Part shown: piece after piece, positions 34,604-38,642 of the stretch
How the letters are laid out: the number at the start of each line of letters is the position of its first letter
Position numbering within the stretch: position 1 is the first letter of the stretch
Origin: Vitrella brassicaformis CCMP3155
Taxonomy: Eukaryota > Protista > Chromerida
NCBI GenBank assembly: GCA_001179505.1
Contig: CDMY01000708.1
Location: forward strand, 62,001 to 126,000
DNA length: 64,000 nt
Direction of reading: 5' to 3'
Made by a program: the position numbers and the translations under genes
The notes under the pieces: model-generated
What the model was told of the DNA's origin: nothing
Seen by the model: the letters and a program-made list of their open reading frames with translations, nothing else
Databases searched by the model: none

Positions 34604-36009
34604 TCATTTGCGGAAGAGCCTCCCAGCCGGAGCAGCCCGTGGCGTGTGTGACGGCACAACCGGAGCGCTCGCCCGTCCAGGAATGGCCGCAGGGGCGTTC
34701 TCGCGCTCTGCATGGAAGCAAACAACCACACACAGACCCATGCACCGACCCACCCACGGCTGAAGGTCGGTTCCTGACATCGCACTTACCTCTGTTGGCC
34801 CACGAAGTGACCTGCTCCACAAAGCCGAGGTTGGGGTCCACAGCATGACGCACCTTACGCACCTGCAGACACCAAAGAGCACGTTGTCATGTGAATGGAT
34901 CCATGGCGGCACTTACATACTCACCTCCTCGACTGCCTCGTCGTAGCTCATGCCCTCCACGCGCATGAGGTATGCGATGACGAGCGTGGCTGACCGAGAA
35001 ATGCCGGCCTTGCAGTGGACCAGCACACTGCCCCCATTGTCCAGCGCCCCCTGGATCCATGCAACGGTGCTCTCCAGCACCGACTCGTCCAACACCTGAG
35101 TGCCCTTGTCCTAACACACACACAGACAGACACACAGGCACACAGGCACACAGACACCTATAATGCATGCTGTCGTGTGTGTGTTCGTGTGCGTGTGTCA
35201 GTATTGTTTACCCTGAGGTCGAGTGTGTGGTACTGTATGCGCATATTGGGGTCGTTCTCGAACACGTTTGGACACTCCACAGCAGCGTTCACCACATGAG
35301 ATATGCCGTGACTCAGCAACATCTGCACGGCCAGCCGAAAGGACACAGAGAGGCGCAGCACAGCACGCCATGGCAAGTCGGTCAGCTGGCAACCAGTGTC
35401 TTGCTCTCACCGATTTGTCCTTTGCAACTTCCTCAGATGAAATGTACAGGCGGTCGCGAACTCTGGCACAGTCATATTTGGTCTCTTCCCTCTTCCTCCG
35501 AACGTCCGCGCGACTCGAGTCAGGAGCCTCTGAAGATGCCAACAGACAACAGCCACCAGAATATAGCAGAAAGCAGATGCCCTGTGGTGACCTTCCTCAG
35601 TCCCCTTACCGGCCGCGTCAGTGACCGTTTCGCTGACATCGATAGTGAGTGACCGCATTGGTTTCTTGATGCGCCTGGCCGCCCATCCCCCTGCCGCTGC
35701 TGCGGCATTCGCACCAGTGCGAGACGAGGAGCATGCCGCTCCGGGAGGAGGGCCAGCCTGCAGCATGCACACAACACACAGTCATCCGAGATTGGCCCGC
35801 TCACTCGTTTGTGCGTGTTGAGGGCCGCCCGTCACCTGTGACTCTTCGGGTATGGTCAGGACCTGATCGAGGCTCAGCGTGGATGAGTGGCCGAAGGACG
35901 GAGGCCTTCCGTCGTTGGACGAGGGCATCCCCAGGCGGGAGTCACGCGATGAGTACCGGACGACGACTGCATCCCGCTGAGCTGGACTGCTGATGCCATC
36001 CTCCGCCAT
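34604..36009 (-). CDS. Dual-specificity protein phosphatase (MKP/DSPc-like)
   Basis: [38 protein letters not shown] (CX5R), [17 protein letters not shown]. Basic-hydrophobic segment [12 protein letters not shown] upstream. Confidence 0.92.
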
Positions 36010-36138
36010 CCTTCTTCCCTGGTCGGCGAGAGGTCCAATCGCGCAAGCCCGAGGTGGGGGGCTGCCCCCAGTCTCGCAGTTTCTTCAACTCGAAGAAGGG
36101 CTGTGTCAGTGGGGCTATTGCGCATCCCGTCGCCACTC

Positions 36139-37461
36139 ATGCGGGTGTTTTCGGTCCTCCCGCTGATTTTCACCGCCTCCTATGGGCAACCGTACATCGG
36201 CGGGGAAGTGTACTGCGGCGAGACCATCATAACATGGTGCTTTCCAGCGAATTCTGATTACGCGTGGCCGGCGGACCAGCCAAAACTGTCGTGGGGCAAT
36301 GGGTCAAGGAACTTGGCAACGCAGCTGACAGGACCAAGTTTCAAGTTGGACAACGGCTGCTGGTCCTTCAACACCACTGAGACCGATGGCACCGACCAAG
36401 TCACGTGCATCCAGCAGCCCATCCCTAACCCGAACTACAACCCCTGCGAGGCAACGATTGAGATCTCAGAGGACTGGTACAACGTCACAAACACCGTTGG
36501 CATCCAGCCCGGGGATGTAGACAACCCACTGCCAGGCGACGTCACTCTACAGAACTTCTACTCGACGCAGAAATGTGTCTACGCGAGGACATACCAGAGG
36601 GGAGCCGAAATTCAGACATATACGGCGCAAGACGTCACCTTGCAGGTAGGTAGGTCAGCCCATCCATCCACCAGCGTGTGTTGCACTCACGATTGCGTGC
36701 AGGGGTACGGCGAGTTCATTGTCGACTTCCTCGCCTGCGGCAAGCTCGACAACCCCGACCAACTGTGCAGCGACAGTGACATGTATGATGGGGGAGCGGA
36801 ACCCAAGCTCTCTCGCACCGGCAAGCTCTACTTCCGATCGTGCATCAAGGGTGTCGAGGGTGCAGACCTTCACCTGGCCTTGCGCCACTGCTCCTCGCAC
36901 AACAGCGACCCCCGCGCTCCCCCAACCGCCACCAACACCACGCTTGTCACCGACTATTGCGGCAGCAGGGTCTTCACTGACAGCAGCGGAAGAAATCACG
37001 TGACAAAGACCTTCGTCGGCACAGCCCAGCCCCTTTCCCAGTGCGGCATCCTTGAAGTCGGCTCCCATCGGTATGTGGAATCGGACATTCTCTATGTAAC
37101 GTGTGTCGTCACCGTGTGCACCGCCGCCAAGTGCAGCAACCTCAAAGACACAGCAGAGGACGGTGACACGTGCCGACAGGATTGGTCAGCGCCGCCAAAT
37201 GCTGACCGATTGAGACGGCTGTCCAACGGGGAGGCGGAGGAGGGGATTGATTTCACAGAGGTGCTTATGCTGACGACTGGACGAGCGGATGGTCCTGTGA
37301 TCGACGACAAGGTGAGAGAGACACACATATATTATCACTTTGCCTCGTACTCTCATATCTGTCCACCGGTGTCTTTGCAGTCTGATGCTGTTGCTCTTGG
37401 TGGCGGCTTTGTGGTGTCCTCCCTTGCTGTGCTGGTCGGATTGCTGGGAGGACAGCCGTAG
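36139..37461 (+). CDS. Zona pellucida (ZP)-module-like secreted, probably GPI-anchored protein (3 exons; introns 36646-36702 and 37312-37380)
   Basis: Signal MRVFSVLPLIFTASYG. VYC..CEAT..KCVY, GYGEFIVDF, LYFRS, LHLALRHCSSHNSDP..LVTDYC, ILYVTCVVTVC..KC..TC, RLRR, DGPV, hydrophobic C-terminus. Confidence 0.78.
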   Translation: MRVFSVLPLIFTASYGQPYIGGEVYCGETIITWCFPANSDYAWPADQPKLSWGNGSRNLATQLTGPSFKLDNGCWSFNTTETDGTDQVTCIQQPIPNPNYNPCEATIEISEDWYNVTNTVGIQPGDVDNPLPGDVTLQNFYSTQKCVYARTYQRGAEIQTYTAQDVTLQVGRSAHPSTSVCCTHDCVQGYGEFIVDFLACGKLDNPDQLCSDSDMYDGGAEPKLSRTGKLYFRSCIKGVEGADLHLALRHCSSHNSDPRAPPTATNTTLVTDYCGSRVFTDSSGRNHVTKTFVGTAQPLSQCGILEVGSHRYVESDILYVTCVVTVCTAAKCSNLKDTAEDGDTCRQDWSAPPNADRLRRLSNGEAEEGIDFTEVLMLTTGRADGPVIDDKVRETHIYYHFASYSHICPPVSLQSDAVALGGGFVVSSLAVLVGLLGGQP

Positions 37462-37619
37462 CTGTGTGTGTGTGATTTCGGGCGGGCAGTTGGACACTCA
37501 TCGATCAAGTCATATGCTTTACTATACAGACATGCATAGTGAGTAAGACATACATACGTATACACACTGTGAACGTCTCTCATTTCAACGAGTCCATCGG
37601 TGAGTGTCTCGTGATATCG

Positions 37620-38642
37620 ATGGCCAGCCAGAGCGGCGACGGCCAGCCGGACGGTGGCGACGTCGACAGTCCGAATTGCCAGCTGCGCGTGGTGTCCCAG
37701 GGCGGCCGGGCAGAGCATGAGGACAGCGGCCTGAAGTGCTCCCTGTCGAGCAAGCGGCACTTTGACGAGGCGACGCTCAGCTTCAATACCCTGCTGTATG
37801 TGCAGATCACCAACACGGGCAAGAGACACATCGAACTCATGTGAGTGACTGAGTGAGTGAGTGAGTGAGTGATGCTGACCACAAAACACCGGAGACACAC
37901 GATGGTGTCTCTGTGTGTGTGTGTCTCTGTGTTGTGCGTCTAGAATGCTCACCTACAAGTTCAAAGGTGCACAATGCTTGCGCGGCATTGGATTGTGCAT
38001 TTTCTTCTCAGCAGCTGTGTAAGTAATGATATCTCCTGTGTGTGTCAGACCCATGGAGCGGCCACGGTGCCCCGACGCACATACACACTCACGATCCACT
38101 CACAATCCACAGGTGCACAGTCTGGTGTTCAGTTCGCCGGTTTGTGAAGAGTCTGCCTTGCCTGCTCCACCCAGCCGACGGCAGCCAGCGGAAGGACGAC
38201 GGCGTTCGCTCCTTCAAGTCCGTGACGTACGCTGCCAGAATGGCCGAGGACAAGAAGGCAAGACAAGCAGACAGAACACATCCATCCATTTGTGTGACTT
38301 CATGTGTGTGTCTCTTCCGATCAGATCCAGCGCGATAGCTTCATCTGTGAGCTGCCGGAGCCAGAGCAGTCCGACGGTGACTCTGAGGTCGAAATCGTCC
38401 TCACAGTCCACTTCAGATCGCACCATACCAGGTTTGTTATCTATAGTGCACACGCATGTCTGTGTCTCTCTCAGTGCGCATGCGGATGTATGTGAATGTT
38501 CAGGTCGATTGCCCGACAGCGTTGCTCGTCTTTCTGTCTCGATGTGCTGTCCGAGGCAGCATCGACAGGGAAGCGGACACTCTCGCCCTCGAGGCAGTCC
38601 ACCAGCACCGACCAACAAATCAAGAAGTCGAGACACGGCTAG
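37620..38642 (+). CDS. Hypothetical protein (about 6 small exons)
   Basis: Spliceable exons CQLRVVSQ..LYVQITNTGKRHIEL|IMLTYKFK|DPWSGH..|..|IQRDSFICELPE..VEIVLTVHF|..KKSRHG*. Start and one junction uncertain. Confidence 0.5.

What the first reader, a model, noticed from the sequence alone, without database searches (positions are those of the whole stretch)
36139..37461. Complete zona pellucida (ZP)-like module in a non-animal
Seen in sequence, in the canonical ZP order: signal peptide; ZP-N-like VYC..CEAT..NTV..KCVY; linker GYGEFIVDF (compare the internal hydrophobic patch GxGxFxVxM); LYF strand; LHLALRHCSSHNSDP-x-LVTDYC (LxLxxCxAxPS...LIxxGC); ILYVTCVVTVC..KC..TC (LYxHCxVxLC..C..C); furin-type RLRR; EHP-like DGPV; GPI-type hydrophobic tail. 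Established: ZP modules (ZP2/3, uromodulin, tectorin, cuticlin) polymerise into extracellular filaments after cleavage at the furin site and are generally treated as an animal innovation. Inference: a ZP-type polymer in an alveolate alga could build wall or sporangium layers or mediate gamete recognition, and would imply an older origin or a gene transfer. The gene has only two short introns, fewer than most neighbours.
Basis: partly seen in the sequence, partly recalled or inferred. Interest (0 to 1): 0.87.

Follow-up and report, generated by a model that had tools for sequence, protein, structure and literature searches.

The report
Egg-coat-type ZP protein in an alga
A transcribed, spliced gene of the alga Vitrella brassicaformis (a relative of malaria parasites) encodes a small surface protein that most likely consists of one complete but very divergent "zona pellucida" module, which animals use to build egg coats and which reviews still treat as animal-only.

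Summary
Window 36139-37461 (+) is a three-exon gene of Vitrella brassicaformis CCMP3155 (CEM30966.1, 398 aa). It is transcribed, and both introns (57 and 69 nt) are spliced out in three RNA data sets. It lies among ordinary Vitrella genes on a 290-kb contig.

The one detectable homologue, in the sister parasite Piridium sociabile (43% identity), keeps all 16 cysteines and both hydrophobic ends.

The ZP reading is probable, about 0.75, but not proven.
- **For:** the only Pfam hit in both orthologues is ZP-C, below the curated cut-off (15-17 and 21.8 bits against 24.6). UniRef already calls the protein "ZP domain-containing protein". Language-model neighbours of the whole protein, and of the N-terminal half alone, are ZP, ZP-N and CUT_N families. 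A two-sequence AlphaFold model retrieves only ZP-module proteins from AlphaFold DB (30 of 30 in Swiss-Prot).
- **Against:** that model has pLDDT 35, and a single-sequence model retrieves no ZP protein. A geometry-only aligner sees a generic Ig sandwich. Pfam ZP-N does not hit.

RLRR is only RR in Piridium. The conserved EHP-like strand is TEVLMLTT, not DGPV.

Polymerisation and biological role are untested. The scan has already reported about 20 other ZP-like notes elsewhere in this genome.

The parts
36079..37603 (+). Transcript (5' UTR 60 nt, CDS, 3' UTR 142 nt)
   Evidence: Spliced transcriptome contig L001 matches 36079-36646, 36698-37311 and 37379-37603 at 100%. Spliced contigs also occur in runs X1, X2 and X8.
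36139..36645 (+). Exon 1 CDS: signal peptide plus ZP-N-like half (aa 1-169)
36646..36702 (+). Intron 1: 57 nt, GT..AG, phase 0, in frame and stop-free. It sits exactly between the ZP-N-like half and the IHP-like strand.
   Evidence: Joint 'skips 57' in X1, X2 and X8; sequence.
36703..37311 (+). Exon 2 CDS: linker/IHP, ZP-C-like half, basic site and EHP-like strand (aa 170-372)
37312..37380 (+). Intron 2: 69 nt, GT..AG, phase 0, in frame and stop-free. It sits between the propeptide and the C-terminal hydrophobic signal.
   Evidence: Joint 'skips 69' in X1 and X8; sequence.
37381..37461 (+). Exon 3 CDS: small-residue stretch (SDA) plus a hydrophobic tail ending the protein (aa 373-398) and the stop codon. 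This is a GPI-attachment-signal-like tail.
   Evidence: Kyte-Doolittle windows above 1.9 at residues 375-383 with no cytoplasmic residues after them. The same arrangement is found in Piridium. GPI attachment itself is inferred.
36139..36186 (+). Predicted signal peptide (aa 1-16, ...ASYG|QP)
   Evidence: Hydrophobic N-terminus read from the sequence. The cleavage position is inferred by the -3/-1 rule. No predictor was run.
36193..36645 (+). ZP-N-like domain (aa 19-169; Cys 26, 34, 74, 90, 103, 146)
   Evidence: No Pfam hit. For residues 18-169 alone, the ESM Atlas feature neighbours are ZP-N/CUT_N clusters (0.91-0.93) and the structural neighbours are ZP-N-bearing proteins (TM by query 0.51-0.61). 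Foldseek alignments to whole ZP modules start at residues 2-14 of the model.
36703..36729 (+). IHP-like strand GYGEFIVDF (aa 170-178; GSGKFDVDL in Piridium)
   Evidence: Conserved in the orthologue. Predicted as a strand in the two-sequence model, at model residues 156-160. The equivalence to the ZP-C beta-A/IHP strand is inferred.
36808..37134 (+). Stretch matched by Pfam PF00100 ZP-C (aa 205-313, profile positions 28-132 of 133). The full ZP-C-like half is aa 170-326 (36703-37173), with Cys 181, 191, 216, 232, 255, 283, 303, 308, 313 and 326.
   Evidence: E 0.0064-0.021, 15.4-17 bits, cut-off 24.6. Orthologue: E 2.2e-4, 21.8 bits, profile positions 8-132.
37207..37218 (+). Basic site RLRR (aa 338-341), 12 residues after the last cysteine. 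Candidate consensus cleavage site.
   Evidence: It is the only basic cluster in the protein. Piridium has only RR there. Cleavage is not shown.
37252..37278 (+). EHP-like strand FTEVLMLTT (aa 353-361)
Evidence: Conserved as TEVDILSS in Piridium. Predicted strand at model residues 338-347, which are protein residues 355-364.

Best explanation
This is a genuine nuclear gene of Vitrella brassicaformis, and it is expressed. Its 398-aa product is a secreted, cysteine-rich surface protein made of little besides one very divergent zona pellucida (ZP) module. In order, it has a signal peptide, a ZP-N-like Ig domain (6 Cys), a short linker with an IHP-like strand, and a ZP-C-like Ig domain (10 Cys). 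The ZP-C-like domain includes a C5 / C6 / C7-x4-Ca-x4-Cb-x12-C8-like series. After it come a basic (dibasic) site, a conserved hydrophobic EHP-like strand, and a C-terminal GPI-signal-like tail. This is the layout of minimal animal ZP precursors such as ZP3, and of the C-terminal part of uromodulin and GP2. By analogy (inferred, not shown), the precursor is tethered to the outer face of the plasma membrane. A subtilisin/kexin-type protease would cut at the dibasic site and release the EHP-containing propeptide. The freed ZP-N and ZP-C faces could then join head-to-tail with neighbouring molecules to form an extracellular filament or coat layer. I put about 0.75 on 'true ZP module' and about 0.4-0.5 on 'it polymerises'.
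For: **Real gene.** The spliced transcript appears in four independent assemblies. A genomic run covers the stretch without differences. The neighbours on the 290-kb contig are ordinary eukaryotic genes: ADA2, a dual-specificity phosphatase and a CCDC39-like gene. GC content is uniform with the flanks.

**ZP identity.**
- PF00100 ZP-C is the only Pfam family hit at E up to 10, in both this protein (E 0.006-0.02) and its Piridium orthologue (E 2.2e-4, covering profile positions 8-132 of 133).
- UniRef names the protein 'ZP domain-containing protein'.
- ESM Atlas feature neighbours are ZP families at 0.93-0.94 with 197-209 shared features, for both orthologues.
- The N-terminal half alone gives ZP-N/CUT_N clusters at 0.91-0.93, and structural TM 0.51-0.61 to ZP-N-bearing proteins.
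- Foldseek with the two-sequence AlphaFold model gives ZP3/ZP1, uromodulin and betaglycan ZP-C at the top of PDB.
- The same model gives 30 of 30 ZP-module proteins in AFDB Swiss-Prot, with E down to 2.9e-6 and alignments spanning nearly the whole model.
- Every named hit in the top 30 of the 2.3 million AFDB clusters is a ZP protein, as are 8 of 10 rows in the Atlas shape search.

**Architecture.** All 16 cysteines, the IHP-like and EHP-like strands, a dibasic site and both hydrophobic termini are conserved over 43% identity. The exon boundaries coincide with the domain boundaries. The mechanism for animal ZP modules is taken from PMC7737619, and the cysteine scheme from PMC7456536.
Against: - The Pfam ZP-C score is below the curated gathering cut-off in both orthologues, and Pfam ZP-N (PF23344) and CUT_N do not hit at all.
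- No solved ZP protein is found by sequence or by a two-sequence profile.
- Both AlphaFold models are of low confidence, with mean pLDDT 31 and 35.
- The single-sequence model of the same protein retrieves no ZP structure (best E 0.27), so the Foldseek signal is fragile.
- With the geometry-only aligner, the C-terminal half matches many unrelated Ig-like sandwiches at Z 6-7.4. ZP-C chains score no higher (Z 6.2-6.6), although they have the longest aligned lengths.
- All TM-scores for the whole module are below 0.5.
- The atlas states that 4-10% of shuffled proteins reach a feature score of 0.9.
- The R-x-R-R motif is not conserved, and Piridium keeps only RR.
- Cleavage, GPI anchoring, localisation and polymerisation are all untested.
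Confidence: 0.7

Rival explanations
1. It is a true ZP-module protein that does not polymerise. It would stay on the cell surface as a GPI-anchored receptor or adhesin, like endoglin or betaglycan, whose ZP modules bind ligands instead of forming filaments. Possible roles are cell-cell or cell-substrate contact of zoospores or gamete-like stages.
For: The evidence for the fold is the same as for the best explanation. The furin-type site is not conserved and Piridium has only RR, so regulated cleavage is uncertain. Betaglycan and endoglin ZP structures are among the structural matches. The Piridium transcript comes from gamogonic stages, the only stage sampled.
Against: A dibasic site followed by a conserved hydrophobic strand, and then a membrane anchor, is the arrangement used by polymerising ZP precursors. 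The protein has no other domain that could bind a ligand.
Confidence: 0.3
2. It is not homologous to ZP modules. It would be a Vitrella/Piridium-specific cysteine-rich surface protein with two generic Ig-like beta-sandwiches. The weak ZP signals would come from shared composition (Cys spacing, beta-rich content) and from prediction methods pulling a poorly constrained model towards a familiar fold.
For: All sequence evidence is sub-threshold and there is no ZP-N profile hit. The models are of low confidence. The single-sequence model gives no ZP hit. The geometry-only aligner ranks transglutaminase, integrin and GH2 Ig domains as high as ZP-C. The related lineage has other GPI-anchored, Cys-rich tandem beta-sandwich families (6-Cys and SRS; from my own knowledge).
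Against: Different methods converge on the same family and on no other. These are a Pfam HMM in two orthologues, the UniRef name, protein-language-model features for the whole protein and for the N-terminal half alone, ESM-model shape, and Foldseek in three libraries with exclusively ZP named hits. No 6-Cys or SAG family appears in Pfam at E up to 10. None appears among the top 30 Swiss-Prot structural hits either. The order of features after the last cysteine (basic site, hydrophobic strand, anchor) matches ZP precursors.
Confidence: 0.22
3. The segment is a contaminant, or a recent transfer from an animal such as a coral or mollusc host, and not a resident alveolate gene.
For: Vitrella was isolated from coral (my own knowledge). 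The Piridium material was isolated from whelk tissue.
Against: The gene sits inside a 290-kb Vitrella contig between ordinary genes. Its GC content matches the flanks and its short GT..AG introns are spliced in culture transcriptomes. An exhaustive phmmer search of 1.84 billion representative proteins finds no animal protein. It finds only the Piridium orthologue at 43% identity.
Confidence: 0.02

Closest known systems
ZP3-type minimal ZP-module precursors of animal egg coats
   Same: Similar size (398 aa against about 420 aa). The layout is signal peptide, one ZP module, basic cleavage site, hydrophobic EHP strand, then membrane anchor. ZP3 proteins are the top Foldseek matches in AFDB Swiss-Prot, with alignments covering nearly the whole model, and ZP3/ZP1 is the top PDB match.
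   Different: There is no detectable pairwise sequence similarity. The anchor is GPI-type, not a transmembrane helix with a cytoplasmic tail. There are extra cysteines (6 in the N half, 10 in the C half). The organism is a unicellular alveolate alga. TM-scores are only 0.23-0.26, on a low-confidence model.
Uromodulin / GP2 (GPI-anchored polymerising ZP-module proteins)
   Same: It has a GPI-type tail and a basic site a few residues after the last ZP-C cysteine, followed about 10 residues later by a hydrophobic strand. The spacing after the presumed C7 (C-x4-C-x4-C-x12-C) resembles the C7/Ca/Cb/C8 series described for ZP-C. Uromodulin filament and precursor structures are among the top PDB matches. 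The mechanism is described in PMC7737619.
   Different: It lacks the EGF and D8C domains. Uromodulin is cut by hepsin at a non-furin site, and the protease here is unknown. Homology rests on weak profile and model evidence.
Other ZP-like genes of Vitrella brassicaformis reported earlier by this scan (for example s1-239424, s1-248669, s1-201633)
   Same: Same genome and the same kind of claim: a ZP-N plus ZP-C module with a basic site in an expressed, secreted or membrane protein.
   Different: None of them is similar enough to be found by an exhaustive phmmer search with this protein, so this gene and its Piridium orthologue form a separate, small lineage. Several of the others carry additional domains. 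I could not fetch or test them here.
Apicomplexan 6-Cys (s48/45) and SRS (SAG1-type) GPI-anchored surface proteins
   Same: They are GPI-anchored, cysteine-rich, built of tandem beta-sandwich domains, and occur in the wider apicomplexan/chrompodellid lineage. Some act in gamete fertility (my own knowledge).
   Different: No Pfam hit to these families at E up to 10. None appears among the structural matches. Those families lack a basic site plus hydrophobic propeptide strand before the anchor.

Membership tests
ZP module (ZP-N + ZP-C; Pfam PF23344 + PF00100, PROSITE ZP profile) | ZP-C profile match at or above Pfam's gathering score (24.6 bits) | tested here: not met
   The score is 15.4-17.0 bits (E 0.0064-0.021) for this protein and 21.8 bits (E 2.2e-4) for the Piridium orthologue. 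PF00100 is the only family hit, and in the orthologue it covers profile positions 8-132 of 133. The match is significant by E-value but below the curated cut-off.
ZP module (ZP-N + ZP-C; Pfam PF23344 + PF00100, PROSITE ZP profile) | ZP-N profile match (PF23344 or CUT_N PF25057) | tested here: not met
   There is no hit at E up to 10 for the whole protein, exon 1 alone or the orthologue. Indirect support comes only from ESM Atlas features and shape for residues 18-169.
ZP module (ZP-N + ZP-C; Pfam PF23344 + PF00100, PROSITE ZP profile) | Two consecutive Ig-like beta-sandwiches with ZP-N and ZP-C topology | tested here: inconclusive
   Both models are all-beta but of low confidence, with pLDDT 31 and 35. 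With the two-sequence model, Foldseek returns only ZP proteins. With the single-sequence model it returns none. VIA-align gives Z 6-7 for generic Ig folds and for ZP-C alike.
ZP module (ZP-N + ZP-C; Pfam PF23344 + PF00100, PROSITE ZP profile) | Conserved cysteines: C1-C4 and C2-C3 in ZP-N; C5-C7, C6-C8 and Ca-Cb in ZP-C (PMC7456536) | tested here: inconclusive
   There are 16 Cys, all conserved in Piridium. The C half has a compatible series: C232, C255, C303-x4-C308-x4-C313-x12-C326, plus a Cys just after the IHP-like strand. The N half has 6 Cys, with C26 and C146 as candidates for C1 and C4. The assignment is by spacing only. No residue-level alignment to a ZP profile could be obtained and no reliable disulfide geometry is available.
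ZP module (ZP-N + ZP-C; Pfam PF23344 + PF00100, PROSITE ZP profile) | Precursor features: consensus cleavage site after ZP-C, EHP strand in a C-terminal propeptide, and a membrane anchor (PMC7737619) | tested here: met
   At sequence level these are RLRR 338-341 (RR in Piridium), the conserved hydrophobic strand 353-361, and a terminal hydrophobic tail 373-398 with no cytoplasmic residues, in both orthologues. Processing itself was not tested.
ZP module (ZP-N + ZP-C; Pfam PF23344 + PF00100, PROSITE ZP profile) | Polymerisation into extracellular filaments | not testable with these tools
   This needs protein biochemistry and EM.
Apicomplexan 6-Cys / SRS surface antigens | Profile match to s48/45 or SAG domains | tested here: not met
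   There is no such family in Pfam scans at E up to 10, and none among the top 30 Swiss-Prot structural hits.

The most novel reading that the evidence does not exclude
Chrompodellid alveolates possess bona fide, polymerising ZP-module proteins. The same may hold for diatoms, where a cluster of about 180 uncharacterised proteins is the nearest non-animal neighbour. In that case the ZP module is not a metazoan or holozoan invention. It would be either much older or anciently transferred, and ZP-type filaments would build part of the wall, sporangium or gamete coat of these protists. This minimal, intron-poor, GPI-anchored 398-aa protein would then be the simplest non-animal ZP precursor available for experiments.
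Probability: 0.35. Interest if true: 0.85.

Novelty: new member of a known kind. Interest (0 to 1): 0.6.

Why it matters
Reviews define the canonical ZP module as a metazoan synapomorphy and admit only incomplete ZP-like domains in choanoflagellates (PMC13361971). A complete module in an alveolate, far from animals, would change this in two ways.
- Its full set of parts would be ZP-N, ZP-C, a cleavage site, an EHP and an anchor.
- It would move the origin of this extracellular polymerisation device, or reveal an ancient transfer.
- It would give a candidate structural protein for the little-known walls and coats of chromerids and their parasitic relatives.

This gene is among the simplest test cases: one module, no extra domains, small and expressed in culture.

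The limits should be stated plainly. The evidence here is weaker than a confident fold or a supra-threshold profile hit. UniRef already carries the automatic ZP label. The same scan has already flagged many other ZP-like genes in this genome, so this locus adds a further divergent lineage and is not a first discovery.

Tried and rejected
- **Sequence searches for relatives.** The word-indexed search of 5.8 billion proteins found only the protein itself, with a single query. With the two-sequence profile it found only the protein and its Piridium orthologue. The exhaustive phmmer search of 1.84 billion representatives added only the Piridium orthologue and a spurious bacterial Hcp-repeat protein. 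A metagenome scan gave 244 pattern matches, none confirmed. No deeper alignment could therefore be built.
- **Solved structures by sequence.** The whole protein, each C-terminal half and the two-sequence profile gave no ZP chain, only chance hits with E above 0.7.
- **Paralogue in the window.** None was found by tblastn.
- **Literature.** I found no paper linking ZP domains with Vitrella, chromerids, Apicomplexa, diatoms or alveolates. The 'diatom' co-occurrences are unrelated to diatom proteins. The chromerid genome paper does not mention zona pellucida.
- **Rejected readings.** Contamination or chimera. A 6-Cys/SRS family assignment.
Full report
**1. What is at the coordinates.**
Window 36139-37461 (+) carries an ORF that reads through two in-frame, stop-free introns. 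Removing 36646-36702 (57 nt) and 37312-37380 (69 nt), both GT..AG, gives a 1197-nt CDS and a 398-aa protein. That protein is letter-for-letter the database protein P0001. Its accessions are CEM30966.1 and UniRef A0A0G4GLH1, from Vitrella brassicaformis CCMP3155.

A JGI transcriptome contig (L001) matches 36079-37603 at 100% with both introns removed. Contigs of three RNA-type runs from at least two studies show the same two joints. A genomic run carries the unspliced stretch without a single difference. ATG 36139 is the first ATG of the transcript.

The gene lies on contig CDMY01000708.1 (290 kb). Upstream are two ADA2-type genes and a divergently transcribed dual-specificity phosphatase gene. 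Downstream are a 190-aa gene and a large CCDC39-like gene. GC content (0.58) equals that of the flanks. The locus is therefore a resident, expressed Vitrella gene and not a chimera or contaminant. Its introns total 126 nt, less than in its neighbours.

**2.
Every quoted string is present at the stated order. The protein has these features:
- a hydrophobic N-terminus
- 16 cysteines
- four N-glycosylation sequons
- one basic cluster (RLRR, residues 338-341)
- a hydrophobic tail that ends the protein with no cytoplasmic residues, as in GPI-attachment signals

**3. Relatives.**
An exhaustive phmmer search of 1.84 billion representative proteins found one true relative. It is a 392-aa protein from the Piridium sociabile transcriptome, with 43% identity and E 1e-54. 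A bacterial Hcp-repeat protein at E 2e-4 is spurious.

Piridium is the non-photosynthetic parasite that branches as sister to Vitrella. Its data come from gamogonic stages taken from whelk tissue (10.1101/636183). Because the protein resembles the Vitrella one and no animal protein, it belongs to Piridium and not to the host.

The alignment keeps all 16 cysteines, GYGEFIVDF/GSGKFDVDL, KLYFRSCI, DYCG, SHRYV, the C-x4-C-x4-C cluster and both hydrophobic ends. The C half (48% identity) is better conserved than the N half (35%).

- RLRR aligns with DRRM, so only a dibasic site is conserved.
- DGPV falls in a seven-residue gap of Piridium, whereas TEVLMLTT (354-361) is conserved as TEVDILSS.

That conserved peptide is also a predicted beta-strand, so it is the better EHP candidate.

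No further relative was found with a two-sequence profile or in metagenomes. There is no paralogue in the window.

**4. Is it a ZP module? Evidence for.**
- **Pfam.** The only family hit at E up to 10 is PF00100 (ZP-C). For this protein it covers residues 205-313 and profile positions 28-132, at 15.4-17 bits and E 0.006-0.02. For Piridium it covers profile positions 8-132 of 133, at 21.8 bits and E 2.2e-4.
- **Database name.** UniRef already names the protein 'ZP domain-containing protein'. From my own knowledge this usually reflects a PROSITE ZP-profile match. I could not verify that.
- **ESM Atlas, whole protein.** The feature neighbours of both orthologues are ZP families at 0.93-0.94 with about 200 of 256 shared features. 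One diatom cluster without Pfam annotation also appears. The Atlas's own model of this protein has only ZP families as structural neighbours, at TM 0.30-0.45.
- **ESM Atlas, N-terminal half.** Residues 18-169 searched alone return ZP-N/CUT_N clusters at 0.91-0.93. Structural matches to ZP-N-bearing proteins have TM by query 0.51-0.61, including a stand-alone ZP-N cluster at 0.51/0.52.
- **Foldseek with the two-sequence AlphaFold model.** In PDB it returns ZP3/ZP1 filament, uromodulin and betaglycan ZP-C first. In AFDB Swiss-Prot it returns 30 of 30 ZP-module proteins: ZP3, ZP2, ZPLD1, DMBT1, GP2, OIT3, CUZD1 and TGFBR3. There E reaches 2.9e-6 and the alignments span nearly the whole model. Among 2.3 million AFDB clusters every named hit in the top 30 is a ZP protein. 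In the Atlas shape search 8 of 10 rows are ZP families.
- **Order of features.** After the last cysteine come a basic site, a conserved hydrophobic strand about 10 residues later, and then a membrane anchor. This is the order described for ZP precursors (PMC7737619).
- **Cysteine series.** C232, C255, C303-x4-C308-x4-C313-x12-C326 is compatible with the C5, C6, C7, Ca, Cb, C8 scheme. A further Cys directly follows the IHP-like strand, a position where nematode ZP-C domains often have one (PMC7456536).
- **Exon structure.** Exon 1 holds the signal peptide and N half. Exon 2 holds the linker/IHP, the C half, the basic site and the EHP-like strand. Exon 3 holds the anchor signal.

**5. Evidence against, and controls.**
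- The Pfam score is below the curated cut-off of 24.6 bits in both orthologues. No ZP-N or CUT_N profile hits.
- No solved ZP protein is reachable by sequence.
- Both AlphaFold models are poor, with mean pLDDT 31.2 and 34.6.
- As a control, I searched PDB with the single-sequence model of the same protein. It retrieves no ZP structure, and its best hit is an unrelated protein at E 0.27.
- The control cuts both ways. The ZP hits are not produced by the amino-acid term of Foldseek alone, so they reflect the geometry AlphaFold adopted once the orthologue was added. It also shows that the result depends on one low-confidence model.
- The geometry-only aligner places the C-terminal half among generic Ig-like sandwiches (transglutaminase, integrin, GH2, arrestin, RbmA) at Z 6-7.4. 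ZP-C chains score no higher, at Z 6.2-6.6. They do have the longest aligned stretches: 144 of 170 residues for betaglycan ZP-C and 147 for uromodulin.
- The tool itself warns that Z under 8 may mean only a common arrangement. The Atlas warns that 4-10% of shuffled proteins reach 0.9.

These lines of evidence are not independent. All of them point to one family and none to another, and I put about 0.75 on a genuine, highly divergent ZP module.

**6. Mechanism.**
Shown:
- the gene, its transcript and its splicing
- conservation of the cysteine framework
- conservation of the two hydrophobic ends, a dibasic site and the two candidate hydrophobic strands

Inferred from the animal paradigm:
- entry into the secretory pathway
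- GPI anchoring, with the attachment site near S373-A375
- cleavage at the dibasic site by a subtilisin/kexin-type protease
- loss of the EHP-containing propeptide
- head-to-tail ZP-N/ZP-C assembly into filaments of a wall, sporangium or coat layer

From my own knowledge, Vitrella forms thick laminated walls and sporangia and releases zoospores. Nothing here links the protein to any particular stage. The alternative, a non-polymerising GPI-anchored ZP receptor or adhesin like endoglin or betaglycan, is nearly as likely.

**7. Comparison with what is known, and novelty.**
A 2026 review defines the canonical ZP module as a metazoan synapomorphy and accepts only incomplete ZP-like domains in choanoflagellates (PMC13361971). 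The papers held in the searchable library do not link ZP domains with chromerids, apicomplexans, alveolates or diatoms.

On the other hand, the automatic UniRef name already says 'ZP domain'. This scan has also recorded about 15-20 other ZP-like notes elsewhere in the same genome, with follow-ups reaching similar conclusions. I could not fetch or test those loci. They are too divergent to be found with this protein. This gene and its Piridium orthologue therefore form a further, separate lineage.

I file it as a probable new member of a known kind (ZP-module proteins) in an unexpected taxon. Membership is not fully proven, because two profile tests were not met.

**8. Practical notes.**
Read laying was given 1851 letters.

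Noticed in passing
window 36009-36139: The ZP-like gene and the upstream dual-specificity phosphatase gene (minus strand, CDS 34604-36009) are head-to-head. Transcript contigs of the phosphatase gene end at about 36051-36053 and those of the ZP-like gene begin at 36079-36084. The two transcription units are therefore only about 25-30 nt apart, probably sharing a compact bidirectional promoter.
   Followed up: partly
window 36646-36702 and 37312-37380: Both introns are multiples of three without stop codons and sit at domain boundaries. The first lies between the N half and the IHP-like strand, and the second between the propeptide and the anchor signal. Retaining an intron would insert 19 or 23 residues without truncating the protein, which is why the uninterrupted 452-aa ORF exists.
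   Followed up: partly
ESM Atlas cluster (no locus); seen with P0001 and P0002: A cluster of 183 uncharacterised proteins of about 350 aa, mostly from diatoms and without Pfam annotation, is as close in language-model features (0.94) as animal ZP families. Its representative's predicted structure matches DMBT1, uromodulin-like and Dumpy-type ZP proteins at TM 0.50-0.54. ZP-like modules may therefore also exist in stramenopiles.
   Followed up: no
P0002 (Piridium sociabile transcript): The only orthologue comes from a transcriptome of gamogonic stages of an intracellular parasite of whelks. The family is thus kept in both a free-living alga and its parasitic sister, and it is expressed at a sexual stage in the latter. 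That was the only stage sampled, so this is no evidence of stage specificity.
   Followed up: partly
P0003 (metagenomic bacterial protein): A 998-aa bacterial protein made of six Hcp (type VI secretion) repeats scored E 2e-4 against this protein over about 50 residues in four stretches. It is a repeat-driven false positive, and a reminder that E values around 1e-4 in that search are not safe.
   Followed up: yes
window 37620-38642 (+): A 190-aa gene without Pfam annotation starts about 17 nt after the 3' end of the ZP-like transcript (37603). I did not examine it further.
   Followed up: no
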